From Haliotis cracherodii (Eukaryota): a stretch of DNA of 64,000 nucleotides. Below the pieces are notes generated by a model that was not told where the DNA came from, searched no databases, and saw only the letters and a program-made list of their open reading frames with translations. Location: contig NW_027266330.1 in NCBI RefSeq assembly GCF_022045235.1, positions 1,860,001 to 1,924,000 of the forward strand, given 5' to 3'. Below, piece by piece: positions 1,974-47,700 of the stretch (position 1 is the stretch's first letter; every line of letters starts with the position of its first letter). A program made the position numbers and the translations under genes.

Positions 1974-2915
1974 GTGGTAAATGTTTCGATAACCAGCAAT
2001 GCTCCGAGTGTGAGGAGCAGACGGGTCGATGCAGCACCAACTGCTCTAAAGGATATTTCGGCCCAAAGTGCATGGACGTGTGCAGCAGAAGGTGCAGGTA
2101 CCGCACATGTAAGTTGCACCTCGACAGGGGGATTGGGAGATGTACTGATGGCTGCATACCAGGATTCCAAGGCCCAAACTGCCAGAGGCCATGTTACACT
2201 CACCAGGAAGACTGTACCAGATGCCCAGGTGGATGTGATGAGGAGTTCTGCCAGATGGGTGGAACTTGTTTCTCTGGCTGCAGCGACTCATACTACGGAG
2301 CAGGATGTAGGAAGTGTTCCAGCAGATGCAAGTCCTGCAACAGGATCACAGGAACATGTGAGGAGTGTCAGCCTCCATATTCTGGACTGGACTGTAGATC
2401 CTCGTGTGAGCACTGTGTCGGTGGATGTGAGAGTGGCTGCCAACAGGGATGCAGACAAGGATTCTATGGAGACAACTGTACTGAAGCATGCAGTGACACC
2501 TGCCGAGCTGATCCCTCCCTGTCTACTGATGAACACTGTCCTGAGGGTGACTCATGTACCCCTGAGTGCCACAGCCAGACTGGCGAGTGTGTTCACGGTT
2601 GTGTAGATGGCTGGTACGGCCCGAAGTGTTCAAGGCGATGCAACTCTAACTGCAAACATCAAATGTGTAACCATGCGGGTGTATGTGTTGAACGCTGTGG
2701 GAAATGCCTCAATAAAACTTGTAACGGATCCTGTATGAATGGATGCAGCATCAGGGAAAATTGCAACACGACGTGTGATCTATGTCCTGAGGGTGTTTGT
2801 GATGAGAGCTCTGGTGTCTGTGTGCAGGGATGCAATACGACTGGATCTGGATGTGGCGACAACTGCACAACCAACTGCCAAACGCCCGACTGTCCTTCTG
2901 GATCTTGCCACGCAG
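1974..2915 (+). CDS. Gene A, large EGF-like ectodomain exon (MEGF10/SCARF-like multiple EGF-like domain receptor; signal-peptide exon not in window)
   Basis: Acceptor ttctcag|1974 and donor 2915|GTACAC, phase 1-1. The frame is open with repeated CxxG(F/W/Y)xGxxC motifs (CSKGYFGPKC, CIPGFQGPNC, CRQGFYGDNC, CVDGWYGPKC). Confidence 0.9.
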
Positions 2916-3084
2916 GTACACATCTTCAGTCGTAGACAAACAGATATGTCAAGTTGTAAATCGGTTTTAAATATGTGCAAGATATTCTCAATTCCTCAGT
3001 CAACATATTCAAGCCCCTTTATAAAGGGCCACACTTCCCTTACCTCATACTAGGGAGTATATAGGATAGTACATTAATTTTAAT

Positions 3085-3600
3085 GTGACTGTCCAACACA
3101 TTGTCGGTGGATGTCCAGCTTTGGCACAAACACAGTATCTTAAGCGATATGATGGAGTGGCTCGATCTTTTCATTATCGTCTTTACCATGCTTAGGGTTT
3201 TTACACAGGGGTCCATCCATTGGACGACCCAGAATATGTAGAGGGCGTCATGGAACATATTAATTATAAAATGATTTGGAATAGCTCCGAGTACAGCCTC
3301 AGACCCCTAGTGTTCTCGGTGCCTTAGGTTTGGTTCTTCCCAATCTGTGGACTGACATTGGGAGAGTACTCGGGTTTGTTGCCAGGAATACAGCCCTTCT
3401 GACAATCTGGGTAATCTAGAAGGCTGCAGTGTTGGGGAGTCTTTACATTCTCCGAAAGGTTCTTGGTGGATTCGACTAGGCAGCCGTCAAAAGCCTAACC
3501 ATCCAGTATGTTCCAGGATCACCCAAACCTTCTTTGCTGCATTTATTTATGTTAATCTGAAAAATATATATATATAAAATAATAATAATAATAATAATAA
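3085..3600 (+). mobile_element. 5'-truncated, decayed R4/Dong-clade (restriction-like endonuclease) non-LTR retrotransposon in gene A intron
   Basis: Translates to TVQHIVGGCPALAQTQYLKRYDGVARSFH (zinc-knuckle/RHD region) and VLGALG...KAAVLGSLYILRKVL (typical C-terminus), with in-frame stops. It ends in a (TAA)n tail. Confidence 0.75.
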
Positions 3601-3632
3601 ATACCTATATGTACCCATTGCTTCCCCTTCAG

Positions 3633-3756
3633 ATGACGCGACGGCAGGCGCCTCCAACACCGTCACAGTGACATCGGTCGTGGTGGTTGTCTTCATCATC
3701 CTGGCTGCATGTACCGCAAGCTACATCTGCTATCGTAAAGGAATGTGTCTGAGACG
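3633..3756 (+). CDS. Gene A transmembrane exon
   Basis: Acceptor cccttcag|, donor |GTCAGT, phase 1-2. Encodes DDATAGASNTVTVTSVVVVVFIILAACTASYICYRKGMCLRR, a hydrophobic span with a basic stop-transfer segment. Confidence 0.88.
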
Positions 3757-4158
3757 GTCAGTAGACATCCACAACAGTAGTGTGATGAAGCAGTGCTCTT
3801 CCTGGCGAGTTATGATGACATTTGACACTCAGTAGATTTGTGTCCCTTAGTCGTATCAGAATCCGATTATGGTGGGATTCCTCCTGATAACTATTCTTAG
3901 CTTTACAGTATCATATTAAATAAAGGTAGATGAAATAGGAAGAAAGAAAATGTTCAGCAGTGTAATTGACAAAATTACTTTACGCAACCTTACATTACCC
4001 TGTCAACAATTGTCATGATGGTTTTATTGTAATTGTAATGGAGTTATATTTTACATCTTAACTTCATGAACCTTTCAAATAACCGCATTTCATGATTTCA
4101 TTTTGAAGAGATAGTCTAATCTAGTCCTGCTAATGAAACAGGGGGACATTTGTTGCAG

Positions 4159-4465
4159 GAATGGATCTGATGACAAGATGCTGGACGCTAAGCTGGAGCA
4201 GGCAGACGTCCCCATCAATGACTACCTGGAGCTCCACCACTACGAGGACATCAGAGAGGAAGATATTATGCGACCAGACCAGAACAAAGACGGCGCCGGC
4301 AGAGAGAAGGCTCTAGACATTCCTGTTTTAGCAGACTGCTTCCAAGGGGAACGAAACGATAAGGACAAATCAGTACGAGACTCCCAGCCATACACTGAGC
4401 TGAAGGAGGGCGCGCGTGTTCCTCGTCCGAGATCATCCGTGAGGTACTTATCTCCACATGACTAG
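4159..4465 (+). CDS. Gene A terminal exon: cytoplasmic tail with tyrosine motifs (YLEL, YEDI, YTEL)
   Basis: Acceptor tgttgcag|, phase 2, which matches the TM exon donor. The frame is that of ORF 4133-4465 and ends at TAG 4463-4465. Confidence 0.85.
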
Positions 4466-4706
4466 GAGAGCTACTTGTGTCTATCGCCACGTGACAAGGC
4501 GATCTACATGTGTCTATCACCACGTGACAAGGAGACCTACTTGTGTCTTTCCCAACGTGACAAGGATACCTACTTGTGTCTTTCCCCACGTGACAAGGAA
4601 ACCTAAATGTGTCTTTCCCCCCCCACGTGACAAGGAGACCTACTTGTGTCTTTCCCCACGTGACAAGGCGACCTAGTTGTGTCTATCACCACGTGACAAG
4701 GAGAGC
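4466..4706 (+). repeat. 33-bp tandem repeat (~7 units) immediately after the gene A stop
   Basis: Unit TACTTGTGTCTTTCCCCACGTGACAAGGAGACC at 4472, 4505, 4538, 4571, 4604, 4641 and 4674. Confidence 0.92.
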
Positions 4707-4964: not shown

Positions 4965-6339
4965 CAGTATTGGTCTAAGGCAGACTGTAATTGTCTAAGG
5001 TAGGCTGTATTGGTCAAAGGTGGACTGTAATGGTCTAGGGCAGGTTGTATTGGTCTAAGGTGGGATGTAATGGTCTAAGGCAGGTTGTAGTGGTCTAGGG
5101 CAGGCTGTAATGACCTAAGGCAGGCTGTAATGATCTACGTTAGGCTGTAATGGTATAACGTAGGCCGTAGTGAGTCTCAGGCAGGCTGTAATGGTCTTAG
5201 GTAGGCTGTAATGGTCTAAGGCAGACTGCATTGGTCTACGGTGGGATGTTATGGTCTCAGGCAGGCTGTATTGGTCTAAGGCAGCCTGTATTGGTCTAAG
5301 GCAGGCTGTAATGGTCTAAAGCAGGCTGTGAAGATCTACGTTAGGCTGTAATGGTATAATGTAGGCTGTAATGGTCATGGTTACACAGTATTGGTCTAAT
5401 GGCAGGCTGTAGTGGTCTAAGGCAAACTGAAATGGTCTATGTCGGGATGTTATGGTCTAAGGCAGGTTATGTTTGTCTAAGTTAGACTGTATTGGTCTAA
5501 GGTAGGCTCTAGTGGTGTTTGGTAGGCTGTAATGGTCTACGATAGGTTGTAATGGTCTAAGACAGGCTGTTCTGGTCCAAGGCAGACTGTAATGGTATAA
5601 AGGAGACTGTAAAGGTCTAAGGTAGACTGTATTGGTCTAAGGCAGACGGTAGTGGTCCATGTTAGGCTGTAATGGTCTAAGGCAGGTTGTAATGTCCAGG
5701 GCAGACTGTATTTGGCTAAGGTATGCTGTAATTGTCCAAAGATAGGCTGTAATTGTATAAGGTAGACTGTAAAGGTAGGCTATTATCGCAGGTTGTATTG
5801 TTCTACGTTAGTCTGTAATGGTCTAAGGCAGGCTGTAAATGTCTAAGGTAGACTGTAAAGGTCTAAGGTAGGCTGTTATGGTCTAAGGCAGTCTGTATTG
5901 GTCTACGTTAGGCTGTAATGGTCTAGGACAGGCGGCAATGATCTAAGGCAGACTGTAATGGTCTGAGGCAGGCTGTAATGGTCTAGGGCAGGCTTAATTA
6001 TCTAAGACAGGCTGTAATGATCTAGGGCAGGCTGTAATTGTCTAGGACAGGATGTAATGATCTGGGGCAGGCTGTAACGGTCTGAGGCAGGCTGTAATAG
6101 TCTGGGGCAGGCTGTAATAGTCTGGGGCAGGCTATAATGGTCTGAGGCAGGCTGTAATAGTCTAAGGCAGACTGTAATGGTCTAAGGCATGCGCGCAGGC
6201 TGTAATGGTCTAAGGCAGACTGTAATGGTCTAATGCAGGCTGTCATGGTCTAAGGAAGACTGTAATGAGCTAAGGCAGACTGTAATGGTCTAAGGCAGGC
6301 TGTAATCGTCTAAGGTAGGCTGTAATGGTCTAGGGCAGA
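4965..6339. repeat. 20-bp degenerate minisatellite running into an assembly gap
   Basis: Consensus GGTCTAAGGCAGGCTGTAAT is repeated throughout. Confidence 0.93.
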
Positions 6340-6569
6340 NNNNNNNNNNNNNNNNNNNNNNNNNNNNNNNNNNNNNNNNNNNNNNNNNNNNNNNNNNNNN
6401 NNNNNNNNNNNNNNNNNNNNNNNNNNNNNNNNNNNNNNNNNNNNNNNNNNNNNNNNNNNNNNNNNNNNNNNNNNNNNNNNNNNNNNNNNNNNNNNNNNNN
6501 NNNNNNNNNNNNNNNNNNNNNNNNNNNNNNNNNNNNNNNNNNNNNNNNNNNAAGGAAATAAATATTTTC

Positions 6570-6920
6570 CTTCCTAGATTTTATGAAGGCCTTTGATTTG
6601 GGTGAGATGTTTTTAACAATTTGGACTTCACAGTGATGTCTGGAAATACATATGGATAAGGAAATATTGATATGTTTTCTTTATAAAAAAGGAAATCGTT
6701 GCAACGGCATATGAAAGGTTTTGTGTAAACAAATTCTTCCTGTCTGAGCTACTTTTTATGAAACCAAAAATCAATCAAAAAAATAATTCTCTCTTGTATT
6801 TAATCGTGAATTGCCTCCTTAATATCCAGTTGAGAGCTATTTTGTGCATATTAATTCTAACATCGCTCAAAATGTCAGTTTGGCCAGTTTCTGAAATGAC
6901 TGGACAATAGTTATTATATT
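6570..6920 (+). mobile_element. Highly decayed LINE reverse-transcriptase fragment
   Basis: Sequence from about 6571 translates FLDFMKAFDL (LDFxKAFD RT motif). The surrounding sequence is disrupted. Confidence 0.35.
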
Positions 6921-7041
6921 TTAATATAGATACAATTACTAGAAAGGTGGTCATTTTATGTAAAGTGATGAATCACCAAAGAATGCTGTACCGGTGGAGG
7001 TGCTTGGTAGTTAGCAATAGTGTGTACATTCCTCCATGTTT

Positions 7042-9660
7042 TACACTCAGAGATCACAGAGGCCCTGTCATGTCCCTGTAACAATACACGCCTATAGTAT
7101 GACATGGGTGTACACTCAGAGATCACAGAGGCCCTGTCATGTCCCTGTAACAATACACGCCTATAGTATGACTTGAGTGTACACTCAGAGATCACAGAGG
7201 CCCTGTCATGTCCCTGTAACAATGCACGCCTATAGTATGACTTGAGTGTACACTCAGAGATCACAGAGGCCCTGTCATGTCCCTGTAACAATACACGCCT
7301 ATAGTATGACATGGGTGTACACTCAGAGATCACAGAGGCCCTGTCATGTCCCTGTAACAATACACGCCTATAGTATGACATGGGTGTACACTCAGAGATC
7401 ACAGAGGCCCTGTCATGTCCCTGTAACAATACACGCCTATAGTATGACTTGAGTGTACACTCAGAGATCACAGAGGCCCTGTCATGTCCCTGTAACAATG
7501 CACGCCTATAGTATGACTTGAGTGTACACTCAGAGATCACAGAGGCCCTGTCATGTTCCTGTAACAATGCACACCTATAGTATAACATGGGTGTACATTC
7601 AGAGATCACAGAGGCCCTGTCATGTTTCTGTAACAATGCACACCTATAGTATGACATGGGTGTACATTCAGAGATCACAGAGGCCCTGTCATATCCCTGT
7701 AACAATGCACACCTATAGTATGGCATGGGTGTACACTCAGAGATCACAGAGACCCTGTCATGTTCCTGTAACAATGCACACCTATAGTATGGCATGGGTG
7801 TACACTCAGAGATCACAGAGTCCCTGTCATATCCCTGTAACAATGCACACCTATAGTATGGCATGGGTGTACACTCAGAGATCACAGAGGCCCTGTCATG
7901 TTCCTGTAACAATGCACACCTATAGTATGGCATGGGTGTACACTCAGAGATCACAGAGGCCCTGTCATATCCCTGTAACAATACACGCCTATAGTATGAC
8001 TTGAGTGTACACTCAGAGATCACAGAGGCCCTGTCATGTCCCTGTAACAATGCACACCTATAGTATGGCATGGGTGTACACTCAGAGATCACAGAGACCC
8101 TGTCATATCCCTGTAACAATACACGCCTATGGTATGACTTGAGTGTACACTCAGAGATCACAGAGGCCCTGTCATGTCCCTGTAACAATGCACGCCTATA
8201 GTATGGCATGGGTGTTCACTCAGAGATCACAGAGACCCTGTCATGTTCCTGTAACAATCGAACCTATAGTATGACATGAGTGTAGACTCAGAGATCACAG
8301 AGGCCCTGTCATGTTCCTGTAACAATGCACACCTATAGTATGACATGGGTGTACACTCAGAGATCACAGAGACCCTGTCATATCCCTGTAACAATGCACG
8401 TCTATAGTATGGCATGGGTGTACACTCAGAGATCACAGAGGCCCTGTCATGTTCCTGTAACAATGCACACCTATAGTATGGCATGGGTGTACATTCAGAG
8501 ATCACAGAGGCCCTGTCATGTCCCTGTAACAATGCACACCTATAGTATGACATGGGTGTACACTCAGAGATCACAGAGACCCTGTCATATGCCTGTAACA
8601 ATGCACACCTATAGTATGGCATGGGTGTACACTCAGAGATCACAGAGGCCCTGTCATGTTCCTGTAACAATGCACACCTATAGTATGGCATGGGTGTTCA
8701 CTCAGAGATCACAGAGGCCCTGTCATGTTCCTGTAACAATGCACACCTATAGTATGGCATGGGTGTACATTCAGAGATCACAGAGGCCCTGTCATGTCCC
8801 TGTAACAATGCACACCTATAGTATAACATGGGTGTACATTCAGAGATCACAGAGGCCCTGTCATGTCCCTGTAACAATACACACCTATAGTATAACATGG
8901 GTGTACACTCAGAGATCACAGAGGCCCTGTCATGTCCCTGTAACAATGCACACCTATAGTATAACATGGGTGTACATTCAGAGATCACAGAGGCCCTGTC
9001 ATGTCCCTGTAACAATGCACACCTATAGTATGACATGGGTGTACACTCAGAGATCACAGAGGCCCTGTCATGTCCCTGTAATAATGCACACCTATAGTAT
9101 GGCATGGGTGTACACTCAGAGATCACAGAGGCCCTGTCATGTCCCTGTAACAATGCACACCTATAGTATGGCATGGGTGTTCACTCAGAGATCACAGAGG
9201 CCCTGTTATGTCCCTGTCACAATGCACACCTATAGTATGACATGGGTGTACATTCAGAGATCACAGAGGCCCTGTTATGTCCCTGTCACAATGCACACCT
9301 ATAGTATGACATGGGTGTACATTCAGAGATCACAGAGGCCCTGTTATGTCCCTGTCACAATGCACACCTATAGTATGACATGGGTGTACATTCAGAGATC
9401 ACAGAGGCCCTGTTATGTCCCTGTCACAATGCACACCTATAGTATGACATGGGTGTACATTCAGAGATCACAGAGGCCCTGCCATGTCCCTGTAACAATG
9501 CACACCTATAGTATGACATGGGTGTACATTCAGAGATCACAGAGGCCCTGTCATATCCCTGTAACAATGCACACCTATAGTATGACATGGGTGTACATTC
9601 AGAGATCACAGAGGCCCTGTCATATCCCTGTAACAATACACACCTATAGTATGACATGAG
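7042..9660. repeat. 69-bp tandem minisatellite (~38 copies)
   Basis: TACACTCAGAGATCACAGAGGCCC recurs with a 69-bp period (7042, 7111 and onward). This explains the 23-aa repeat ORFs on both strands. Confidence 0.96.
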
Positions 9661-10919
9661 TTGTGTAAGGTTTCATATTCCTTTCCGTTGCGCCAAGTCG
9701 CATTCTACTCGTCCTCGTCGTGTGAGGAAAATATTATATATTAATGGACAGAAAATGTTATATATTAATGGACAGAACTGTATTATGCGGAGCCCTGTGG
9801 CAAGTATAAAACATTTTTTTCTTATTTCTAAAAACTGATATTTACTATNNNNNNNNNNNNNNNNNNNNNNNNNNNNNNNNNNNNNNNNNNNNNNNNNNNN
9901 NNNNNNNNNNNNNNNNNNNNNNNNNNNNNNNNNNNNNNNNNNNNNNNNNNNNNNNNNNNNNNNNNNNNNNNNNNNNNNNNNNNNNNNNNNNNNNNNNNNN
10001 NNNNNNNNNNNNNNNNNNNNNNNNNNNNNNNNNNNNNNNNNNNNNNNNNNNNNNNNNNNNNNNNNNNNNNNNNNNNNNNNNNNNNNNNNNNNNNNNNNNN
10101 NNNNNNNNNNNNNNNNNNNNNNNNNNNNNNNNNNNNNNNNNNNNNNNNNNNNNNNNNNNNNNNNNNNNNNNNNNNNNNNNNNNNNNNNNNNNNNNNNNNN
10201 NNNNNNNNNNNNNTAGTGCGAAACTATTGGCGGCCATTTCCGTCTACACAATCCCCCACACATCAGAAATGCTGTAGCTAAGCGGAACCTTAGTCAACAG
10301 TTTATTGAGCAAGCAGACATTGTATCTATGTACATTTCCTGCTTTGTGACCTTATTTGCATATTGATTGGTCGCGCCACCAAGTTTATCAGATAACACTA
10401 TCCATCATATGATACACTTATTTACCTTCCGCTACACATCAGTTGAACATGTTTACATGGACCGATGTTCTCAAAATGTCAATTTGAAACCTGAACATCT
10501 CTTTCGTTTTCACGTTTTCACCCAGTATTCCATGAATTATATAATCTTCTTGGACAAAGGGGGAACGGCGCAGTCAACTTAGGTGCCAAAATTGCGGATT
10601 AGTGTACCAGGGTTGTTAATGTGGGAGGAGCGCTCAAAGTGGTGCAGGTGAACCCACGGTCATTGGCCTCTGACACCGAGGACGCCACTCTGCGACTGTG
10701 CCACCCGTACCCACGTACCTGCTGTTCCTCTTGTAACTACTGTCCAAACTGATCGATGTGCGAAGATTGTATGATAACATTTTATGACACCCGCCTTTAT
10801 GTACATATGTCATATTTGCATCAGGTTTATGATTTGTATCTCCCTTTAAGAAGTCGAAATATATCTGCAACGTATTCACTGTATGGCTGTAGCAGGTGGG
10901 TACAGTAGTACTTTGTGTG

Positions 10920-11144
10920 ATTGTTTGTCGTTTAACGCCACACTCAGCAATATTCCAGCTGTATGACGGCGGTCTGTAAATAATCGAGTCTGGACCAGAC
11001 AATCTAGTGATTGATGTCATGAGCATCGATCCACGCAGTTGGGATACAATCAACCAAGTCAGCGAGTCTGTCCACCCGATCCCGATAGTCGCCTCTTTAG
11101 AATGGGTTGCTGAAGAACTATTCTAACCCAGATCTTCACGGGTC
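10920..11144 (-). mobile_element. SINE-like repeat, family 2
   Basis: Reverse complement of the element at 21715-21963 (head ACCCGTGAAGATC, tail GCTGGAATATTGCTGAGTGTGGCGTTAAAC(CAAA)n). Confidence 0.8.
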
Positions 11145-11507
11145 TGCAGTATTGCTGTCTCATTATTACTATTGTGTTCCTTAATGTATACCGTGACTAA
11201 TAACCTGTTCTGAGTATAATGTTGTTGTACAGGCTTGACGTCATTACACTGAATAAACATTACTGACTGAGACTCTTGTTTCGTATGTGGTGTAGTCGGG
11301 TGCAGTGTTTCAAGCCTATTGCGGCAATGGAGAGAACAGCCGCAAGTCCTCAGCAGTGATGTTAGCATCAACAGAGGGGAGTGGGTAACCTCCCCGGATA
11401 TGCTTTCCCACATGGGTACTCTGTACATTTCCGACTTGATGTTGTTTGAATATTGCTGAATGCGACCTGTTAAGATCGCCTTTTTCTTTTCTTTTTTTTC
11501 GGGGGGT

Positions 11508-11539
<32 letters not shown>

Positions 11540-12951
11540 GTATGCATGACAAAATGACAAAGTTCTACATTTCCTTCTTTCAACTAACAAAGGTTACAGT
11601 ACACATGCAGGGGTGCCTGGAAAATGATACGTAAAATGTGCGTTGGGAGTCTATCAAACAGTCTTAAGAACAATTTGACCACACCACCACCCACTCACTC
11701 ACTCACTCACTCACGCACGCACGTACGCACGCACGCACTCCAGATCAGACGTTTCTGCCAGTGACCTTCACCAGGGACTGTATGAGAGGTGACTGACACG
11801 TTGTGAGCCTCACAAGGATGGACGGCGTTAAAGGGGCCGATCCAGGATTTATAAAAAGGGTGTTCCACTTTGGCCATTTGTAACTTCAAGTTGGGGGGTG
11901 GGAGTCCACCCCAAAACCTTCCACAAACAGAAGTAACAAATGAAAGAGGGGGCGATCCGTCACTGGAGTTGGGTGGTAATTATTTTCCAAATCAATCCTT
12001 CCCAGGTACCCACACTTCTGCCTGATCCCGACTGGTGTCGAAGGCTCCCTCCTGGTATAGTTAAATGTCTTCCACACTGGAAATGACGTCATCATCATTT
12101 GCATAATGTCAATAATCGCAGTTTCATCAAAGAAGAATACCTTGTCACTTTGATGCTGCAGATATATGCTGCCTGGTTGTGTATTTGATTCAGATGCAGC
12201 CTGTAAGGATGGAAAGTATTGTACGTAATACTTGTAAACTGTGACGTGCGTACTGTACATCCTTCGTGGACTCGGAGCTAGTTCTTTCACCCCTCGTACA
12301 TTGCACGAAAGGGAGTGACACACTTACGTACTCGATAGGAAGGGGCTGAAATATACATAAAATGGTATGTGTCAAGTAATATATTTCGCAGTGTTTGGCA
12401 GTAGCCGTTACCTATAAATCCTGAACCAAGGCCTACTCCCCTCTCGTCCAAATCGAATCGTCCAACCTCGGCACGTGCACATACAGGATAGTCACAAAGA
12501 AAAACAACCTGCTGAAACAATAGACTAAGCCGGAAAATATATTATTTGGCCTTGTATCGAAACCGCACAGCTCTATTTCCTCAAAGGTTCATCATTCTCA
12601 AGAAATCTCCAACTTTTATTATATCACCATCGTTAACATATTGTTCATATGTTTCTAATCTGAATGTTCTTAATGTTACTGAAACAACTGATACCCATCT
12701 TGTTGTTTCTTCTGTCCTAAACCGTAGGTGCGTTGACAGGCAAACCTACCAGTTTCATTCACACGCTGGGTCCACTAATATACCTACACTCAAAGAAGAA
12801 TTAAGAAGTGAAGTGTAAGTCAAGAGTCCAGTAACATAGTCAGCTCCTGGGTTACGAACATCGCATGTTATGTGATACCACTTATTGTACGTCTCTGCTT
12901 CCGGGGCTGACCAATCTCATTGAAATCAGGCCTCAGTCCTCGCTCCCGCTG

Positions 12952-13347
12952 AACAAAGATCTGAGGACATCCCATTAGGGTCACGTCAGAACGACCTTTC
13001 ATCCGACCAATCAGAGCATCGCTTACCAGATTATGAAAGTGACAGTCGCAATGTGATTTCTAATCATGCAACCCCGAAAAGTTTAACTCCGAACGATACT
13101 TTCGGGTTTAACGACTGAATCCATACAATCTAGACCATCTATTAGCCATTCCAGAATGTTCTTTTGTTCAGGTTTCAAATTTGTAATCGAGAATTTGTCA
13201 AAATATGTTTCGAAGCGTAGTCTCCAATTTGAAATTAGTGCCGTAAAGCACGAGGAAGCTGCCTTCTGAATAGTAATCTTGGTCGGTCAAAGTTCGCGCA
13301 AGGTCGGTCTGACGTGACCCGTAATGGGATGTCCTCAGATCTTTGTT
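12952..13347. mobile_element. MITE-like element with ~47-bp terminal inverted repeats
   Basis: AACAAAGATCTGAGGACATCCCATTAGGGTCACGTCAGAACGACCTT (12952-12998) is the near-perfect reverse complement of 13300-13347. It is absent from the paralogous region near 59.7 kb. No clear TSD. Confidence 0.75.
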
Positions 13348-14714
13348 TTGAGGTTTATTCTTCCGCCTTAACAGTGTGGAAATTACAAGATTGACCCGTG
13401 TCATTCATGCTTGGTCAAGTAAAAGAGGGCGCTCATGGGAAAAGGAGGTTTACAAGCTAGATGGAAACCTAANNNNNNNNNNNNNNNNNNNNNNNNNNNN
13501 NNNNNNNNNNNNNNNNNNNNNNNNNNNNNNNNNNNNNNNNNNNNNNNNNNNNNNNNNNNNNNNNNNNNNNNNNNNNNNNNNNNNNNNNNNNNNNNNNNNN
13601 NNNNNNNNNNNNNNNNNNNNNNNNNNNNNNNNNNNNNNNTGTGTGCGTGTATGTGGTATAATGTACTTGTGCATGTGTGTGTGCGTGTGTGCGTGGTATG
13701 GTACGGGGTGGGTGTGTGGGTATCTACGTGTTTGTGTATGATTGCGTGCGTGACTTTATAAGTAATTTGGCGTGTGTGCGTGTGCGTGCGAGCGTGCGTG
13801 TTCATAACCCAACCTTAATTTTAAACATTGTGTTGGTATATGTCTTATTTTACCTTATCCAGATCATGACGTTATAATTTGCTTTTATGTCTGAGTGTCT
13901 CGTAGGCCATACCTGGTCGGATGTTATATTGTATTGTTCGTGTACGTGTTTTAGTATGAAGTGTATATAACATGTGACACTATAATAAACATTATTCTCT
14001 TCGGTCACTTTTGTCAGTTGTGATACGTAATTGTCCCATTAAATGTCCAAGGTAAAACATATGGTCGGCGCAGGGCATAAGTCAGCTATGACCATTCTTC
14101 ATCAGTACACTGATATTACTCGTTTCTGTCGTCCACAGACGGAGCTGTCACAACCGATTTGCCCAGGGTCTGCTTCAATAAATAATTGTTATGACACACT
14201 GGAAAAGTCAAGCATTAAGTTTTCGGAAAACTGTGATATAATGGTATGAAATTCATCAGACATGTTCAAACGGTTGACATTTAACCTTTTTACTTTCTTA
14301 CACTTTTAAATGTTTGGCTTGTGGCGTGTTCACAAAGGCCGAATTAAAGAGAAAATGACCCAAGATGACCATGTCTTTGACACCGTTCTCAATTGTTTCC
14401 AAATATAAAATATTACTGTACACATGCAGTCTTAATATCAATTTGACCATCACCACCCCACACACGCTCCCCATTTAAGTGACAAGTCCCTTAACTATGT
14501 TTCTTCACATTCGGTTCAGACGCCTTTGCTTCGGAATAACATAATGAGCTGTGCAAGTTACACATTTGAGAACAATGACAAACAATAGGAGGATTTCATT
14601 AGGAGATACCACCCACGCACAAATTATGTACACACAGAGACATCGTACACATTCGTTACTTTAATGTATTGACCTGCATCTCCACAGCTCAGTCATTCTC
14701 ACAGGGAAATACAG

Positions 14715-15684: not shown

Positions 15685-15689
15685 CGTGC

Positions 15690-15921: not shown

Positions 15922-17321
15922 ATGTTGGTGTGGATGTATGTAACGTAGTAAGAGGGGAGGTAACTCTAATGTATGTTACATAATCTCTCACATTTCAAAG
16001 CTTACAAGTTACACATTCCATTCTACTAAGTCAAGTAACTGTATTGGCTGTTGATCACTTATCAGGAACACACACAATCATGACTCATTGTTTCTTCTCC
16101 TTGTCGTAAATACACCCATAATACTTGCATCGGAAGCCCTGATTTGTTATTGGTATCTAACAATAATTTAATGATATTGAACAAGAAAAGATTACAATAT
16201 CTCATTAATTACATTTTTGAGTGTATATTTATCCCCCCCCCCCCCCCCCCCCCCCCTTCTAATTTTTTTTATTGGATTTACAGTATGTTCCTCATATAAT
16301 TATATTTTTCTGAAAGTGAATAAATATGTAATATGGTCGGTGAAACATACCCAAACATGACATTTGCAGACAATAAACTTTGACATTTACTGATGGCACT
16401 TTACCAAACTTAATATTTCAAAATTCCTTATCAGTATCAGTCATTCGAATTATTAACGGGTCAAATCAGTTGATTTGAAGTAAGTTTCATACAAGCTTGT
16501 TTCTAAAACAATAACCTACACAGTCAATCACGGACAAAAGTCACAAGGCAAGGACCATGAAAATTGATCTTCCTGGACTAATGGACTAACAGTAGATATC
16601 AACTCTCATTCCATTTCACCAAATTTTATTTCTAGACGCTTGACACACATGGTTTGATGATCAGATAAATCAAATCAATACCCAGATTAGGTGAACGGTG
16701 GTATTGCAGGAAATGTGCTAAAACGTCGTAAAACCTAGGTCACTGACTCACTCACTTTCCAATGGGTGAAATGTGAAGAGGACATAAAATGCTCAGAATT
16801 AACAAACGACAACACAGATAATGAGTTCCAATAAGTCACCTTGCGACATAACTGATAACTGAAAGGAACATTATGAATCCGTCATTAGCTTTTGATCCAA
16901 TTCTTATCTAAACCCGGAATGGGTCTTTATATTTTTCAGGTTCATATTTTAAACAAACTGTTGAAGGCACCTGTGTACCATTACTTTTGACAGATGTGAA
17001 TCATGTGAAGCATGACTAGTTTGTATGTATGGTGTATTTCAGCACGTCAAGGCAAAAGGGAACACACCTGGCGATGTTCCTCATCCATGGCTTCTTGGGG
17101 ACACCGAACTGATGTGAGACGGGGTGTTTGTTGGAGAGGCAGGGATGACGATCAACCAAATGATTTGATATGGCCAAAACAGCTTTAATCTACCCTCTAA
17201 AATTAGTTTTAATATTACCTCCCTTTGTAAATTGACCTGACAATGTCAGAGCCTGACACTTTCGTTAATGACAGTTGTTTGTTTCTCGTCTTTACCAGAA
17301 GGGGTGCTGCTGACACAGACC

Positions 17322-17355
17322 ATGTTGGACAGGGGCCTGATGCTGCTACTGCTGG
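17322..17355 (+). CDS. Gene B coding exon 1: start codon and signal peptide
   Basis: Acceptor tttaccag|17299, accATG at 17322, MLDRGLMLLLL, phase-1 donor |GTACGT. Joining the next exon gives MLDRGLMLLLLVVGVLG-QEC. Confidence 0.8.
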
Positions 17356-17940: not shown

Positions 17941-18770
17941 GTATAGTTCCATATCTATCTTCAGAGGTTAACGATAATTTGCCAAAAAAGAAAGCACTGA
18001 AAATGTTAATGTACACATATTTCGATTTTATTGTACTTGAACTTACATCACACCCCTTTCTTATCACCTGAACATTCCATTTGTCAGTCCACCCTGTCAT
18101 AGTTTGTAAACTTTCGCATTTTCAACATTTCCCCTGAAACCACAAGACAAGTGTAGTTTATCATTTGACAATATGATCCCAGCAAAGGCTCTTAGAAATC
18201 TGCCCCGTATTTGTAAATAGTAATTGCAGAAGTACTGTCAGCTTAAGTGTTTGTTGTTCAGTGCAGCACTATGTACCAGATCATCCAGTAATTGAGGAGC
18301 AATGATCCGTGCACTTGGTATAAAAGCAAAGGTTATCCACCCAAACCACTAAGTCCCCTCTTGTAACCAGTATACATTGTCAGGTTCATACATAACGTCA
18401 CCTCTACCAACAGTGTAGGTTGTCCATCTGATTCATTAAGTCCCCTTTAAAGCCGGGATAGGTAGCTGGGGAACAAATCTAGCCTGAAATCCCCAGGAAT
18501 GTTTATGTTAAAAAAGTAACTTGCAATTACGGTGTGATTTACGCATGTATTAAAATGAAATAGTCATGTTGTTTTTCTGGCATAAAAGCTTCTCTACCTT
18601 ATGTTTGCTTATCCTTCTTAATGTCTTTATCTTTTTGATAATCTCAAGTAAATGTTCCAGAAACATTCAGGTGAGGTACAAAGTAATGCGGCACTAGTTT
18701 CTTTGACATGATGACAAATGCATTGATTATTCCATCAAAAAGTTTAAGAGTACTCTTTTCTCCCTTCCAG

Positions 18771-19049
18771 TTGTGGGCGTATTGGGCCAGGAGTGTCCCG
18801 AGGGCAAATATGGAGAACACTGTGAACTGAACTGCAGCCGTTCCTGTTTTCCCCATTCCGGCGAGGATGTGCACTGTGACAGACACAGTGGCAAGTGTTC
18901 AGAAGGCTGCGTGGTTGGATGGTACGGCGATCAGTGCCATGTACCCTGTAAAAAGAACTGCCCGCGGCACATCTGCAGTCAGCAGACTGGTCACTGTACT
19001 CGGCCGTGTGAAGGAAACAAAACGGGGGATTTCTGTGAGATCCACCACG
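18771..19049 (+). CDS. Gene B exon 2: EGF-like ectodomain (~2 MEGF-type modules)
   Basis: Acceptor cccttccag|, donor |GTATGT, phase 1-1. Encodes CPEGKYGEHC...CVVGWYGDQC...CEGNKTGDFC. Confidence 0.9.
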
Positions 19050-20049: not shown

Positions 20050-20173
20050 AGAATGGTCAAAAACAGTCACAAGAACCTGCCTCAATACCACTGGTCGCCA
20101 TACTTGTCCCTGTGTCCGCCATCCTCCTCCTCATCATCATCACCGTGGCTGTACTCTTCATAAGACACAGAAA
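20050..20173 (+). CDS. Gene B exon 3: transmembrane segment
   Basis: Acceptor gttacag|, donor AA|GTATGA, phase 1-2. Encodes ...IPLVAILVPVSAILLLIIITVAVLFIRHRK. It is 124 bp, the same length and phases as the gene A TM exon. Confidence 0.88.
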
Positions 20174-20414
20174 GTATGACAATATTTCACTCATGATCAT
20201 GATTAGGTTTCCTTTCAATGATAAGACAATAACTTCTGCTTGATACCATATACCATGGCTTTTAGTATGTGCACTCTGTGTATGTTACTTCCCTAGTCTG
20301 TAAACTGGTTGAATCGGCACAATACTAGATTATCTTCAACTACGTTGATTCTTACAGGACATATTAGGCATGTTCGACTTGATTAAGTAGGATTTCATTG
20401 GAGAAAACAGTCGC

Positions 20415-21652: not shown

Positions 21653-21663
21653 ATCTAATCAGG
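21653..21663 (+). CDS. Gene B exon 4: 11-bp microexon
   Basis: ctgtttcag|ATCTAATCAGG|GTAAGT. It converts phase 2 to phase 1, exactly what is needed to link the TM exon to the downstream exons in frame. Confidence 0.75.
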
Positions 21664-22621: not shown

Positions 22622-22666
22622 CCTCGGACGACGTGGAGTGTGGAGAACTGCTTAGCCCAGGAGGAG
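22622..22666 (+). CDS. Gene B exon 5: 45-bp juxtamembrane linker
   Basis: ctcattttcag|...GGAG|GTAGGA, phase 1-1. Encodes ASDDVECGELLSPGG. Confidence 0.7.
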
Positions 22667-23758: not shown

Positions 23759-24744
23759 TGGACACTGACCTCATCGTTGCGTGCAGGGAGGGGAAACTAA
23801 AGGCAGTCAGAGACATTCTGTATAAGAGCCCGGAGGACATCAACAAGAAAGGCTGTGGCGGGATGACACCAGTGATGTGGGCAGCAAGGAGGGGACACAG
23901 AGAAGTGCTGGACTTGCTTGTGAGAAAAGAAGCTGATCTGAAACTTGTGGATGATGCCAGTAACAATATCCTTCACCGGGCCTGTTATGGAGGGCATGTG
24001 GCAATGGTGAAACATGTTGTCTCAAAGAACATGGTGGACATCAACAGTAAGGGACGGGATGGGAGAACCCCATTGATGTGGGCAGCTCGGGAGGGGAAAA
24101 GGCAAATCTTTGACTTACTTGTGAGTAAAGGGGGCCTTCCATCAGAGGTTGACAAGGATGGAAACAACATCCTGATACTGGCCTGTTGGGGTGGAAATGA
24201 GGAGATTGTGAAGTATATCATCTCACATGACGATGTAGACATCGATGGAAGAGGACAGTCTGGCAGGACTCCATTGATGGCAGCAGCATACAAGGGACAT
24301 GGAAAGGTCTTTGACCTGCTGGTTGATAAAGAAGCTGATCTGACACTAGTTGATGATGCTGGTGACAACGTCCTCCATGTGGCCTGTCTTGGAGGACATG
24401 TGGATATTGTTAGCCGTGTCCTCAAGCTGGGCAAGGTGGACATAAACAAACAAGGTCAATGTAGCAGGACACCACTGATGGTGGCAGCAAGGCTTGGAAA
24501 TAATGAAATATTTGATTTACTGGTGACTGAAAGAGCTGATGCATTAACAGAGGATGATGACAGAAACACCATCCTTCATCTGGCCTGTGAGGGAGGGCAT
24601 ATTGACATAGTGAAGTATGTACTCTCGCTGGATACTGTGAATATCAACGCCAGGAACAAACAAAATGAAACAGCAACCATGCTGGCAAGAAAAGGAGGCG
24701 ACGTGTGCAACCTTCTTGTGTTGCATGGTGGTCTCAGTAGATGA
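23759..24744 (+). CDS. Gene B terminal exon: ~10 ankyrin repeats (intracellular domain)
   Basis: Acceptor tgttacag|, phase 1 (the ORF-track 'start' is the split GTG codon). Repeated GxTPLMxAA...G / NILHxAC.GGH..IV motifs. Stop TGA at 24742-24744. Confidence 0.93.
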
Positions 24745-45035: not shown

Positions 45036-45179
45036 TCATAATATTACCTTGGACACAAATACAAAAAATAGGGTGGTGAAAGCGAACGTCAGTGATAATA
45101 ATCCATATTCACCCATTCACCCAGTGGTCAAGCTCCCGAAATGTGCTAAGCAGGGAATCAGGGATGATGAGCGATGAGC

Positions 45180-45263
45180 GACATTGTACCCATGTCGGGA
45201 ATCGAACCCGGGTCTTTGGCGTGACGAGTGAACGCTTTAACCACTTGGCTACCCGACCGCCCC
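45180..45263 (-). mobile_element. SINE family 3, head fragment
   Basis: Matches the tRNA-like head of 51403-51572 (GGGCGGTCGGGTAGCCAAGTGG...GGTTCGATTCC). Confidence 0.75.
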
Positions 45264-45672
45264 TAATCTGATAGTGACACGACAAGGTATATTATATATA
45301 TGGAGTAGAATATATAGAATTATAAACATATTTCTTTAATTTTATTTCCAGCTAAAATTTATTTAACATCTACTTAATATTATTGAAGGTTAAAGACTTA
45401 ATACTGTATTGTTTCACGTTGATATAGTTTCAATGGAAAGTTAATTAATTTCGACAAAACCTAATGACAACACAAAACATCTAAAAATCTAAACATGCGT
45501 CTTTGAAATGCTTCATGGTTGGGCTATGGACGAGCAGCGCATCTCCCTCAGACTCAGATAATATGGTAAAATGTTCCACGTTCTATTTGTAACCACCAAT
45601 TTAATGTAAAATCTGAATATATATTTTACAAGGACGATCACTGAATGTGCACTCGTCCTGTTTCCAGTTTAG

Positions 45673-45684
45673 GAAAACGAAAGT
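45673..45684 (+). promoter_or_regulatory. ISRE/IRF-binding-like motif upstream of gene C
   Basis: GAAAACGAAAGT matches GAAANNGAAA(G/C)T and lies ~230 bp before the signal-peptide exon. Function untested. Confidence 0.4.
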
Positions 45685-45914
45685 AAAACCTTTCATCTGA
45701 GCAGTTAAGGCATGTCAGTATCTTGGGAAAGAGCATTGGTTTAATTGGATAACAAATAATTTGAAAGTATGTTTCTTTTAGTTGTATTACAGACCTCAGA
45801 TGAAACTTTGATAATGCAAGCGAACATTAACTTGTTATTATCATATCACATTTATGACTTAGGGAGTGTAAACCTCATGATGTGTTGAGATTGCATTTAC
45901 TAAGCTGTTTAAAT

Positions 45915-47700
45915 ATGGTTCATTTCCTTTTCAGGCCGCTGGGGATCTTAGTGATTACGTGTATACTTATCCCCACACAAGGTAAGCAGATGGGTTATCT
46001 ATATACATTGTGCTGGATAAGGGGTCACTTGTTGACAGCGCTTCAAGAATGTTGTTGTTATTATTATTATTATTATTGAATTAGTTGTTCAATAATGATG
46101 ATATAGTCAGTAAATTTGACTTGTAGCGTGTGAATCTATGTAGACATCATGTTCGTGTCTTAAGTTACAAAGTTCTTTGTATCAATAAGTGAATGGTGGT
46201 TTGATTCCATAAGTAAGATTTATTTGGATGACAATAGAAACTTATCAAATGTATGCCTCTGTTCAAAATATCACTCTTTAGTTATCATTACCTGGCTTAA
46301 TAGATCGATGACGTTACTACCACTACATGGCTGAAGACTGGGTACCACATCCCATGTTATGCAGCACTTTTATCTTAAACCCGACCAAATACCTTTTACG
46401 TTGCTGACTATCACAAGCGATTACGCAGCTGTCATTGGAACGGGGTTGTTGGCAACACTGTTCCAATTTATTGTTCGATCATTTACAATAACAATCATTT
46501 ATTATATATTTTTTTATTAATTCCCAGTTGCTAATTGTAAGGAAAACCAACATTGTTCCGAGTGCGATGAACAGATGGGGCGATGCAGCACACAGTGCTC
46601 TACGGGACATTTCGGCCCCAAATGCATGGGTGATTGCAGCAAGGGGTGCAGGTACCACACATGTGAGCTGATCCCGGCAAAGGTATTGAGACATGTACTG
46701 ATGGTTGCATGCCAGGATTCCAAGGCCTGAAATGCGAGAGGCCATATTACAGTACCCAGGCAGACTGTACCAGATGCCAAGGTGGATGTGATGGGGAGTA
46801 TTGTCAGATGGGTCGAACTTGTTTCTCTGGCTGCAGCGACTCATACTACGGAGCAGGATGTAGGACGTGTTCCAGCAGATGTAAGTCCTGCAACAGGATC
46901 ACAGGAACATGTGAGGAGTGTCAGCCTCCATATTCTGGACTGGACTGTAGATCCTCGTGTGAGCGCTGTGTCGGTGGATGTGACAGTGGCTGCCAACAGG
47001 GATGCAGACAAGGATTCTATGGAGACAACTGTACTGAAGCATGCAGTGACACCTGCCGAACTGATCCCTCCCCGTCTACTGATCTAGTGTGGAACCCAAA
47101 GTTCGACATCTTTGAGAAAGTTAGGGAAACGCAGTCAGTTTATATATTCATACTGGCATGGGATGTTTATTACATATTACTTTCAGACTCTCCACCAATC
47201 GACACAGAGACTGTGAAGTACCTGGTGGTGTTTGTCATCTGCATCCTGGCAGCAAGTACAGTTGGTTACTGCTGCTACCCTGAGGTCTCTCAGCCAAAGT
47301 GTACGTACTGAGCAGATAGTACACATCGATATTTTTCTATCCTACGTAAGTGGGAAAATAACTTGTTATATTCTATTCGTTTCACTACATGAAATTACAT
47401 GCGCTGTTTTACATGTTGTTTTCATGTTCGGTTTGTGTGTCTATACTATCACTATCAACACCACTAATTAAACCACCATTAAGCAAAAGTAAGATCGAAT
47501 TGTTTTAGGTGATTATAATATGTAGTTGGTGCTAATATTCATGCCTTGTCTGTTTTAGAGAGAATGCAGGTTCAGAGGTGGGAGTAGATGAAGGTGAAGC
47601 ACACCACTGTCAACACAACCTGCAGGACATACAAGGTAACCAGTCCGAAGACAATGACAGTAACGAAGGCGACACGGGACCAGTCATTGTATATCTTTAA
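45915..47700 (+). pseudogene. Gene C: frameshifted, internally deleted paralog of gene A (EGF-TM-short tail)
   Basis: Signal exon 45915 (or 45935)-45981 |GTAAGC. The EGF exon from 46528 is homologous to 1974-2530 but has a 1-bp deletion near 46670-46681, giving a stop at 46728-46730. TM exon 47187-47304; tail exon 47559-47700 ending VIVYL*; AATAAA at 47729. Confidence 0.75.

What the first reader, a model, noticed from the sequence alone, without database searches (positions are those of the whole stretch)
1974..47700. Receptor cluster with a shared exon scaffold and swappable intracellular tails
Seen: all three genes use the plan signal exon (phase 1; outside the window for A), single EGF exon entered in phase 1, TM exon (1-2), tail. 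The TM exons of A and B are both 124 bp, and C is 118 bp. B's EGF exon resembles the second half of A's (CHSQTGECVHGCVDGWYGPKC vs CDRHSGKCSEGCVVGWYGDQC). After the phase-2 intron the tails differ completely: Tyr motifs (A), ankyrin array (B), and a short acidic tail ending V-Y-L-COOH (C). C has HHC where A appears to have HHYEDI. Inference: a diversifying paired-receptor-like system in which signalling modules are exchanged by exon shuffling at one conserved intron.
Basis: partly seen in the sequence, partly recalled or inferred. Interest (0 to 1): 0.8.

Follow-up and report, generated by a model that had tools for sequence, protein, structure and literature searches.

The report
Abalone EGF receptors with reshuffled tails
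Three neighbouring black-abalone receptor genes share one exon plan, and across their gene array the outer and inner halves have separate histories, much as in vertebrate paired immune receptors.

Summary
The window is Haliotis cracherodii DNA. Genes A and B are real, intact and already modelled in RefSeq. A is a 483-aa "scavenger receptor class F member 1-like" protein. B is a 510-aa EGF-TM-ankyrin protein, and spliced contigs from 4 runs confirm its junctions.

The shared scaffold (signal exon, phase 1, one EGF exon, phase 1, TM exon, phase 2) holds in 15 of 15 genes examined.

A, B and C are not tail-swapped versions of one another. A and B belong to two large subfamilies, each with about 150 or more genomic matches.

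Across the array, however, ectodomain and tail trees do disagree strongly. In the long-EGF genes every breakpoint lies inside the EGF exon. In the B family the junction lies downstream of the microexon. No exchange was seen at the phase-2 intron.

The N-terminal EGF region is kept alike among genes with different tails, in two species. This is a new variant of a known kind. Any function is inferred only.

The parts
1974..2915 (+). Gene A EGF-like exon, 942 bp, intron phases 1-1 (about 314 Cys-rich codons)
   Evidence: Splice sites read. The translation is contained exactly in RefSeq P0301. At least 147 genomic matches.
2300..2670 (+). Homogenised tract inside A's EGF exon. Its borders hold the recombination breakpoints.
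   Evidence: Windows 2334-2603 are 93-100% nt-identical to A in all 12 local paralogues, against 52-71% in the two outgroups. dS is 0.077 here, against 0.246 in the 5' part and 0.695 in the 3' part. Breakpoints fall at 2296-2674.
3633..3756 (+). Gene A transmembrane exon, 124 bp, phases 1-2
4159..4465 (+). Gene A cytoplasmic tail exon with stop. Motifs: YLEL-HH-YEDI, PVLADCF, YTEL, YLSP.
   Evidence: Only 4 strong copies in the genome (one of them split into two matches) plus 2 weak matches, all on C67.
6340..13639 (.). A-B intergenic stretch holding the three assembly gaps (6340-6551, 9849-10213, 13473-13639) and the 69-nt satellite; the 20-nt satellite (4967-6338) ends two bases before the stretch and abuts the first gap
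   Evidence: No exon of A, B or C lies here.
17268..17355 (+). Gene B signal-peptide exon, 88 bp, ends in phase 1
18771..19049 (+). Gene B EGF-like exon, 279 bp, phases 1-1
   Evidence: Spliced contigs show junction 19049|20050 in 3 of 4 runs. Fold model has mean pLDDT 83.9, and its best solved match is human SCARF1 (8hna), E 4.5e-5.
20050..20173 (+). Gene B transmembrane exon, 124 bp, phases 1-2
21653..21663 (+).
   Evidence: Contigs of X1, X2 and X4 skip 20173 to 22621, and in X2 and X4 the letters between are listed and match the microexon. g1839 has its own 11-nt microexon at the homologous place.
22622..22666 (+).
   Evidence: Junction 22666|23759 seen in 4 of 4 runs.
23759..24744 (+). 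Gene B ankyrin-repeat exon with stop, entered in phase 1
   Evidence: Pfam Ank_2 E 1.5e-68..
45915..45981 (+). Gene C signal-peptide exon
46528..47083 (+). Gene C EGF exon remnant. It covers only the 5' 60% of the paralogues' exon, has one base fewer at 46671-46677, and no phase-1 donor was seen.
   Evidence: Long branch in the 5' tree (0.12 against a median of 0.03).
47187..47304 (+). Gene C transmembrane exon, 118 bp, phases 1-2 with the downstream donor
   Evidence: The same variant is spliced to the tail in RefSeq P0303 of paralogue g1754.
47559..47700 (+). Gene C short acidic tail exon ending GPVIVYL plus stop. No tyrosine motif.
   Evidence: 100% identical in protein to the tail at C67:2198902.

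Best explanation
**What the genes are.** The window holds three members of two abalone-lineage expansions of SCARF1/MEGF10-like single-pass EGF receptors. They lie interleaved in a tandem array on one chromosome. All inherit one exon scaffold: signal exon, phase-1 intron, a single symmetric EGF exon, phase-1 intron, TM exon, phase-2 intron.
- A is an intact long-ectodomain receptor with a tyrosine-motif tail.
- B is an intact short-ectodomain receptor. Its TM exon is joined through an 11-nt microexon and a 45-nt exon to a ten-repeat ankyrin exon.
- C is a decayed copy of the short-tail sister type of A.

**What was shown.** Within the array, homologous recombination (gene conversion or unequal crossing-over; the direction was not resolved) has uncoupled outside from inside.
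- In the long-EGF genes, the N-terminal and middle parts of the EGF exon are homogenised among neighbours whatever their tail. The membrane-proximal EGF part, the TM exon and the tail keep two old lineages: a long Tyr tail and a short tail.
- In the B family, related ectodomains carry unrelated ankyrin exons, and the reverse also occurs.

**What is inferred.** The cell can display matched ligand-binding surfaces wired to different cytoplasmic outputs. These are Tyr-motif signalling, a short or nearly tail-less form, or an ankyrin scaffold.
For: **Identity and gene models**
- Species and models.
- Spliced contigs from 4 runs in 3 studies confirm B's junctions. EGF to TM is seen in 3 of 4 runs. 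TM to exon 5 across the microexon is seen in 3 of 4 runs, with the microexon letters listed for 2 of them. Exon 5 to ankyrin is seen in 4 of 4 runs.
- The TM exon has phases 1-2 in 15 of 15 genes.

**Array map** (264 kb plus 9 further pieces)
- 5 of 5 B-type genes have an ankyrin exon downstream.
- TM type and tail type co-occur in 14 of 14 long-EGF genes where both were found.

**Mosaic in the long-EGF genes**
- Identity to A falls into classes that cut across tail type in the 5' part. It is 93-100% in the middle, and follows tail type in the 3' part.
- 5' tree: a starred clade holds 3 long-tail and 3 short-tail genes. 'Short-tail genes are one clade' is rejected (lnL difference 190, p-AU 8e-6). 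In the 3' tree the short-tail genes are one side of a branch.
- dS is 0.246 (5'), 0.077 (middle) and 0.695 (3').
- Maximum chi-square breakpoints lie at 2296-2674 with 0 of 1000 permutations as high, in 4 of 5 triplets.
- Second species: the 4 H. asinina genes cluster together in the 5' part (support 84/85), but that clade is rejected in the 3' part (p 0.015).

**B family**
- Identity to B, EGF / ankyrin: g1839 78/46, g1746 74/49, P0019 48/73, P0036 53/71.
- Both AU tests reject congruence: p 3.7e-5 and p 3e-80.
Against: - No expression or splicing evidence was obtained for A or C. Reads were laid on B.
- The runs used are only guessed to be RNA. The intron-skipping contigs are the argument that they are.
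- The groups for the B-family AU tests were chosen after I had seen the identity table, so those p-values are too generous.
- The H. asinina 5' clade has support 84/85 and is not starred.
- dN/dS in the 5' part is 0.54-0.93 between classes. Diversifying selection is therefore not shown.
- Homology of the A and C tails is not significant (22 of 200 shuffles reach the observed score).
- Pfam finds no EGF domain in A-type proteins, and there is no sequence match to a solved structure. Only B's unit was folded.
- No canonical ITIM or ITAM is readable in the tails (motif definitions recalled, not from a call).
- The genome-wide tail tabulation covers only about 290 kb of one chromosome.
Confidence: 0.72

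Rival explanations
1. A, B and C are one diversifying receptor set whose signalling tails are exchanged by exon shuffling at the single conserved phase-2 intron after the TM exon.
For: - The phase-2 intron after the TM exon is conserved in 15 of 15 genes.
- The EGF exons are symmetric 1-1 exons.
- B-type ectodomains occur with several tail kinds: ankyrin arrays, short tails, and nSTAND3 plus ankyrin.
- Among short-tail genes, the 1-nt TM-exon variant and the tail variants are not strictly linked.
Against: - All four significant breakpoints are inside the EGF exon.
- TM and tail types co-occur in 14 of 14 long-EGF genes.
- B's ankyrin exon is entered in phase 1, after a microexon and a linker exon.
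- Similarity between B and g1839 continues past the phase-2 intron into the microexon.
- A and B ectodomains are only about 35% alike.
Confidence: 0.08
2. An ordinary birth-and-death tandem family with no exchange. The mosaic pattern reflects different selective constraint along the exon.
For: - The families are large.
- The middle of the exon could simply be under strong purifying selection (dN 0.029).
Against: - Synonymous divergence also drops three- to nine-fold in the middle.
- The 5' and 3' segments give conflicting, well-supported trees.
- The 5' classes follow genomic neighbourhood, not tail type.
Confidence: 0.05
3. The mosaics are assembly artefacts, produced by chimeric joins between near-identical copies in a gap-containing array.
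For: - The window has nine N runs.
- The middle tract is 93-100% identical among copies.
- C's missing base lies in a run of C's.
Against: - The same combinations appear in RefSeq proteins of H. rufescens and H. asinina, from separate assemblies.
- Breakpoints differ between genes.
- The identical tract is only about 350 bp, short for long reads. This last point is inference.
Confidence: 0.04

Closest known systems
SCARF1 (SREC-I) / MEGF10 / Draper class of EGF-repeat single-pass receptors
   Same: - Signal peptide, tandem Cys-rich EGF-like modules, one TM helix, and a cytoplasmic tail with tyrosine motifs.
- RefSeq names A-type proteins 'scavenger receptor class F member 1-like' or 'MEGF10'.
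- The fold of B's unit matches human SCARF1 best (8hna, E 4.5e-5, 31% identity).
   Different: - No Pfam EGF or EMI hit, even at E up to 1.
- No NPxY and no canonical ITAM in A's tail (read; motif definitions recalled).
- The ectodomain is one exon.
- There are hundreds of copies in tandem arrays.
- Some members carry ankyrin tails.
Vertebrate paired receptors kept alike by gene conversion (Siglec-11/16, CEACAM1/3, KIR)
   Same: Neighbouring genes share closely similar ligand-side sequence but have different tails, with concerted evolution of the outer part within a species. Papers seen only as search listing and start of abstract: PMC5701461, PMC2832619, PMC2768862, PMC5112662.
   Different: - EGF-like rather than Ig-like ectodomain.
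- No canonical ITIM, and no clearly membrane-embedded charged residue.
- The conversion tract ends inside one exon.
- Opposite signalling has not been shown.
- This is a mollusc, not a vertebrate.
Notch
   Same: The order EGF-like modules, TM helix, ankyrin repeats, as in B.
   Different: - Precomputed Pfam for P0003 lists only ankyrin families: no LNR, NOD or Notch domains.
- The stretch between the last cysteine and the TM helix is only about 15 residues.
- The EGF exon is short (92 aa).
- The ankyrin tail is encoded by one exon.
EGF-TM-STAND NTPase-ankyrin receptors of the same genome (earlier scan note s1-829554)
   Same: The same B-type EGF unit and TM helix, followed by ankyrin repeats. 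I saw one myself: P0261, with nSTAND3 E 1.1e-23.
   Different: B has no NTPase domain between the TM helix and the ankyrin repeats.

Membership tests
SCARF1/MEGF10-like EGF-repeat receptors | Tandem EGF-like modules in the ectodomain | tested here: met
   **B unit**
- 20 invariant Cys/Gly columns in 30 sequences.
- Model mean pLDDT 83.9.
- Best solved match is human SCARF1, followed by Jagged, Notch and laminin EGF modules.

**A-type**
- Rests only on the cysteine pattern, RefSeq names and 35% similarity to B.
- Pfam and PDB sequence searches found nothing.
SCARF1/MEGF10-like EGF-repeat receptors | Signal peptide and one transmembrane helix | tested here: met
   Hydropathy scan and TM exon translations. 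No dedicated predictor was run.
SCARF1/MEGF10-like EGF-repeat receptors | N-terminal EMI domain (MEGF10/Draper branch; recalled) | tested here: not met
   No Pfam family at E up to 1 in P0121, P0130 or P0131, apart from chance TM-like hits.
SCARF1/MEGF10-like EGF-repeat receptors | NPxY and/or ITAM in the tail (recalled definition) | tested here: not met
   A's tail was read. It has YLEL-HH-YEDI (spacing too short for an ITAM), YTEL and YLSP, and no NPxY.
Paired receptors | Closely related ectodomains on genes with different tails, kept alike by gene conversion | tested here: met
   long-EGF genes; B family.
Paired receptors | One partner with an ITIM, the other with a short tail and a charged TM residue that recruits an ITAM adaptor (recalled) | tested here: inconclusive
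   - No canonical ITIM in the A tail.
- The short-tail type has a Lys at the outer TM edge (TVKYLVV).
- 6 of 8 short tails have no tyrosine motif; 2 of 8 keep HIY(S/D)D.
Paired receptors | Opposite signalling, and co-expression in the same cells | not testable with these tools
   Needs expression data and biochemistry.
Notch | LNR/negative regulatory region and RAM region between the EGF modules and the ankyrin repeats (recalled) | tested here: not met
   Precomputed Pfam for P0003 lists only ankyrin families. The exon map leaves no room for such a region.
   Breakpoints lie inside the EGF exon. Similarity between B and g1839 extends to the microexon.

The most novel reading that the evidence does not exclude
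Abalone run an invertebrate counterpart of paired immune receptors, built on EGF modules instead of Ig domains. Gene conversion keeps the ligand-binding N-terminal EGF cassettes matched across neighbouring genes. Those genes are wired to a Tyr-motif signalling tail, a short or tail-less (decoy or adaptor-dependent) form, or an ankyrin scaffold. A pathogen ligand that engages one partner then also engages its counterpart with a different output. The variable N-terminal cassettes (three classes in this array) would be the evolving recognition surface.
Probability: 0.2. Interest if true: 0.8.

Novelty: new variant of a known kind. Interest (0 to 1): 0.55.

Why it matters
Concerted evolution of ectodomains across receptors with different tails is a hallmark of vertebrate paired immune receptors. 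Finding the same genetic signature in a mollusc, on an EGF scaffold and in two abalone species, would suggest a general solution to host-pathogen conflict rather than a vertebrate invention.

It also provides a concrete set of matched gene pairs for testing in black abalone, an endangered species hit by withering syndrome (recalled, not from a call).

The EGF-TM-ankyrin genes are transcript-verified, but RefSeq names them only as 'ankyrin repeat domain-containing protein 50-like'. That name hides the fact that they are surface receptors. On the technical side, the 11-nt microexon shows how a phase-2 TM exon is adapted to a phase-1 ankyrin exon.

Tried and rejected
**Searches that found nothing**
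- Pfam on the EGF exons and A's tail found no family, and none at E up to 1.
- Sequence search of solved structures with A's and B's EGF exons found nothing.
- Rfam on the very deep repeat in B's intron 4 found nothing.

**Ideas that did not hold**
- Profile comparison of A-type and C-type tails. The first run used a master row that lacks the motif. The second aligned HIYSDIN with HHYEDIR, but 22 of 200 column shuffles did as well. Tail homology therefore stays unproven.
- My first guess at where C's missing base lies (a run of G) was wrong. The alignment puts it in a run of C at 46671-46677.
- I first suspected that the 118-bp TM variant was tail-less, because three RefSeq models end in the intron.
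- dN/dS did not show diversifying selection.

**Limits of the survey**
The tail tabulation therefore covers 264 kb plus 9 short pieces.
- Literature searches found no paper on abalone SCARF/MEGF arrays or EGF-TM-ankyrin receptors. The library lacks most subscription journals, and supplements were closed.
- From PMC9334734 I read only the passages found. It lists two MEGF10 orthologues in Aplysia and nothing on arrays.

Full report
**Source and method.** The window is G000:C67:1860001-1924000 of a 1.18-Gb assembly. The ankyrin exon translation is 100% identical to a Haliotis cracherodii RefSeq protein on a 63.4-Mb contig, so this is black abalone. I searched my own gene models exon by exon.

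**Assembly gaps.** The three gaps named in the finding lie at 6340-6551, 9849-10213 and 13473-13639. A's coding sequence ends at 4465 and B's begins at 17268, so all three are intergenic. The first abuts a 20-nt satellite (4967-6338). The second follows a 69-nt satellite of 37.9 copies (7042-9658). No reading frame or intron of A, B or C crosses a gap. Only the A-B distance is uncertain.

**Gene A.**
- EGF exon 1974-2915: 942 bp, phases 1-1.
- TM exon 3633-3756: 124 bp, phases 1-2.
- Tail exon 4159-4465.

All three translations occur exactly, with these junctions, in RefSeq XP_071085971.1 ('scavenger receptor class F member 1-like', 483 aa; P0301).

**Gene B.** Six coding exons reproduce RefSeq XP_071085979.1 (P0003, 510 aa) exactly:

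| Exon | Coordinates | Length | Phases |
|---|---|---|---|
| Signal | 17268-17355 | 88 bp | ends in 1 |
| EGF | 18771-19049 | 279 bp | 1-1 |
| TM | 20050-20173 | 124 bp | 1-2 |
| Microexon | 21653-21663 | 11 nt | 2-1 |
| Linker | 22622-22666 | 45 nt | 1-1 |
| Ankyrin | 23759-24744 | 986 bp | enters in 1 |

I laid contigs of four runs from three studies on 18760-24750. The runs are only guessed to be RNA.
- Contigs lie on the exons and skip the introns.
- Junction 19049|20050 appears in 3 of 4 runs.
- The skip from 20173 to 22621 appears in 3 of 4 runs. In two of them the intervening letters are listed and match the microexon.
- Junction 22666|23759 appears in 4 of 4 runs.

So the EGF-TM-ankyrin transcript is real.

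**Gene C.** These parts are present:
- signal exon 45915-45981;
- EGF exon from 46528;
- TM exon 47187-47304, which is 118 bp if the downstream donor is used;
- tail 47559-47700, ending GPVIVYL.

C's EGF exon, however, is damaged:
- It has one base fewer than 5 of 5 compared paralogues at 46671-46677.
- Homology to the paralogues ends at 47083, so about 40% of the exon, its donor and most of the intron are missing.
- I found no phase-1 GT donor.
- Its branch in the 5' tree is four times the median.

I read C as a relic. I saw no RefSeq protein for it, which is not proof of absence.

**Are the ectodomains EGF-like?** Pfam finds nothing in the EGF exons, and PDB sequence search finds nothing. 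A model of B's unit built on a 30-sequence alignment has mean pLDDT 83.9. Its best solved match is the N-terminal fragment of human SCARF1 (8hna, E 4.5e-5, 31% identity), followed by Jagged, Notch and laminin EGF modules. A's exon was not folded. Its EGF label rests on its cysteine pattern, the RefSeq names, and 35% identity between B's unit and A at 2444-2698 (E 3e-12).

**Family sizes.** In the genome itself:
- A's EGF exon gives at least 147 matches (804 first-look candidates).
- B's EGF exon gives at least 151 (1598 candidates).
- The ankyrin exon gives at least 186.
- A's tail has only 4 strong copies (one of them split into two matches) and 2 weak matches.
- C's tail has 7 matches. All A-tail and C-tail matches are on this chromosome.

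A and B therefore belong to two different large subfamilies. They are not each other's close relatives.

**Map of the array.** I fetched 200 kb flanking the window and 9 short pieces. Exon queries give the following:
- Five B-type genes, all 5 with a B-like TM exon and an ankyrin exon downstream.
- Fifteen long-EGF genes.

The long-EGF genes carry one of three tail types:
- a long Tyr tail like A's;
- a shorter version of that tail (g1778);
- a short acidic tail like C's.

TM type and tail type go together in all 14 genes where both were found. One gene, g2109, has no TM exon hit.

The TM exon has phases 1-2 in 15 of 15 genes. Its length varies:

| Type | TM exon lengths (bp) |
|---|---|
| Long-tail | 115-127 |
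| Short-tail | 115 or 118 |
| B-type | 124, 130, about 142, more than 150 |

The shared 124 bp of A and B is therefore partly chance.

A-type and C-type TM exons align at the DNA level. The C-type carries a 9-nt deletion. In addition, 4 of 8 C-type genes carry a 1-nt deletion that is compensated by the downstream donor.

**The tails.** Of 8 short tails, 2 keep HIY(S/D)D just before GPVIV(Y/F)L. The other 6, including C, have no tyrosine motif. The profile alignment that pairs HIYSDIN with HHYEDIR is not significant, because 22 of 200 shuffles do as well.

**Mosaic evolution of the long-EGF genes.** Nucleotide identity to A, by 90-nt window:
- 5' part (1974-2150): six genes form one class at 90-97%. 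Three have long tails and three have short tails. The other genes are at 72-88%.
- Middle: in windows 2334-2603 all 12 local paralogues are 93-100% identical to A, against 52-71% for two outgroups.
- 3' part (2694-2915): long-tail genes are 87-99%. Short-tail genes and g1778 are 47-69%.

Maximum-likelihood trees agree:
- In the 5' segment a starred clade holds 3 long-tail and 3 short-tail genes. Holding the 8 short-tail genes together costs 190 log-likelihood units (p-AU 8e-6).
- In the 3' segment the 7 short-tail genes are one side of a branch.

Further support:
- Synonymous divergence is 0.246 in the 5' part, 0.077 in the middle and 0.695 in the 3' part (55 pairs). The uniform middle therefore reflects homogenisation, not only protein constraint.
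- Maximum chi-square breakpoints fall at 2296/2301, 2421-2536, 2506/2511 and 2673/2674, each with 0 of 1000 permutations as high. A fifth triplet (g1778) was weak, at 44 of 1000.
- The 5' classes follow genomic neighbourhood.
- In H. asinina the long-tail gene, the shorter-tail gene and two short-tail genes share one 5' type (clade support 84/85). In the 3' part the long-tail gene sits with the H. cracherodii long-tail genes, and 'H. asinina is one clade' is rejected (p 0.015).

The tail lineages are therefore older than the species split, while the N-terminal region is homogenised within each species.

**The B family.** Identity to B, EGF exon / first 190 ankyrin residues:

| Gene | EGF % | Ankyrin % |
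|---|---|---|
| g2121 | 83 | 87 |
| g1839 | 78 | 46 |
| g1746 | 74 | 49 |
| P0028 | 73 | 73 |
| P0036 | 53 | 71 |
| P0019 | 48 | 73 |

- On ankyrin data, eleven 'type 1' genes form a starred clade (99/98). g1839's ankyrin groups with genes on other contigs (99/96).
- On EGF data the type-1 clade is rejected (p-AU 3.7e-5).
- The EGF-near set is rejected on ankyrin data (p 3e-80).
- I chose these groups after seeing the identity table, so the p-values are too generous.
- DNA similarity between B and g1839 covers the signal, EGF, TM and microexon regions. It is absent at the 45-nt exon and only repeat-level in the ankyrin exon.
- g1839 has its own 11-nt microexon.

The junction therefore lies downstream of the microexon, at a phase-1 boundary.

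**Wider distribution of the B-type unit.**
- All 7 proteins matching B's ectodomain in the length range searched carry ankyrin repeats.
- 12 of 120 ankyrin hits have the EGF-TM-ankyrin order by a crude scan.
- In a library of 1.8 billion representatives, many proteins have a signal peptide, one to six B-type units, a TM helix and ankyrin repeats. Others have short tails, one has nSTAND3 plus ankyrin (P0261), and one has a tyrosine phosphatase.
- Of the 10 proteins I looked up, the 9 from Haliotis were the 8 with ankyrin tails and one short-tail isoform. The phosphatase form is from Gigantopelta.

**Interpretation.** Shown:
- a shared, inherited exon scaffold;
- two intact RefSeq-modelled genes and one relic;
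- strong, repeated discordance between ectodomain history and tail history, seen in two subfamilies and, for the long-EGF genes, also in a second species (H. asinina).

Inferred:
- the cause is gene conversion or unequal crossing-over in the array;
- the outcome is matched recognition surfaces wired to different outputs, as in vertebrate paired receptors.

Not supported:
- exchange at the phase-2 intron;
- the idea that A, B and C are swaps of one another.

Unknown:
- ligands, signalling and expression of A and C;
- whether the 5' cassettes evolve under positive selection (dN/dS 0.54-0.93 between classes).

**Comparison with what is known.** The genes are already in RefSeq under uninformative names. 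The closest protein class is SCARF1/MEGF10, but the EMI domain, NPxY and canonical ITAM are absent. The evolutionary pattern matches paired receptors such as Siglec-11/16 and CEACAM1/3. I saw those papers only as search listing and start of abstract. Here the scaffold is different, and the ITIM/charged-TM logic is not evident. B is not Notch. My searches found no paper describing this array, in a library with known gaps.

**Verdict.** This is a new variant of a known kind, of moderate interest.

Noticed in passing
window 21560-21960 (B intron 4), also 20560-20760: A stretch with summed contig depth up to about 3x10^5 in all four laid runs, with many loose ends and small internal joints. It looks like an abundant, expressed repeat family. 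No Rfam family matched at E up to 0.01.
   Followed up: partly
window 6-1413: A 55-nt tandem repeat of 25.6 copies at 90% matches, lying in A's first intron. It produces long spurious ORFs on the + strand.
   Followed up: partly
window 4449-4704: A 33-nt tandem repeat (7.6 copies) that starts 17 bases before A's stop codon and runs on past it.
   Followed up: partly
window 7042-9658: A 69-nt satellite of 37.9 copies at 95% matches, open in several frames on both strands. It lies between two assembly gaps.
   Followed up: no
window 48764-49784: ORFs whose translations look like fragments of a Tc1/mariner-type transposase, just downstream of gene C. This was judged by eye and was not searched.
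   Followed up: no
window 52000-58000: A strongly G-rich strand (GC skew 0.75-0.92) with six further assembly gaps.
   Followed up: no
P0261 (H. cracherodii, another contig): A 1623-aa RefSeq protein with a B-type EGF unit, a TM helix, an nSTAND3 NTPase (E 1.1e-23) and a long ankyrin array. This is a membrane-anchored NLR-like architecture.
   Followed up: partly
C67:1761719-1769117 (loci L005): Large ankyrin-only ORFs lie inside the receptor array, between a short-tail gene and g1778. They are a possible local source of ankyrin exons.
   Followed up: no
L025 (C67:2108801-2111500): Paralogue g2109 has an EGF exon read in two frames, with a stop in the first part, and no TM exon hit between the EGF exon and the tail exon. 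It is probably another relic.
   Followed up: partly
P0219 (H. rufescens): A 157-aa 'MEGF10 isoform X2' consisting of a B-type EGF unit, a TM helix and a 15-residue tail. A similar ectodomain carries ankyrin repeats in P0229. This hints that short-tail and ankyrin forms might also arise from one gene by alternative processing.
   Followed up: no
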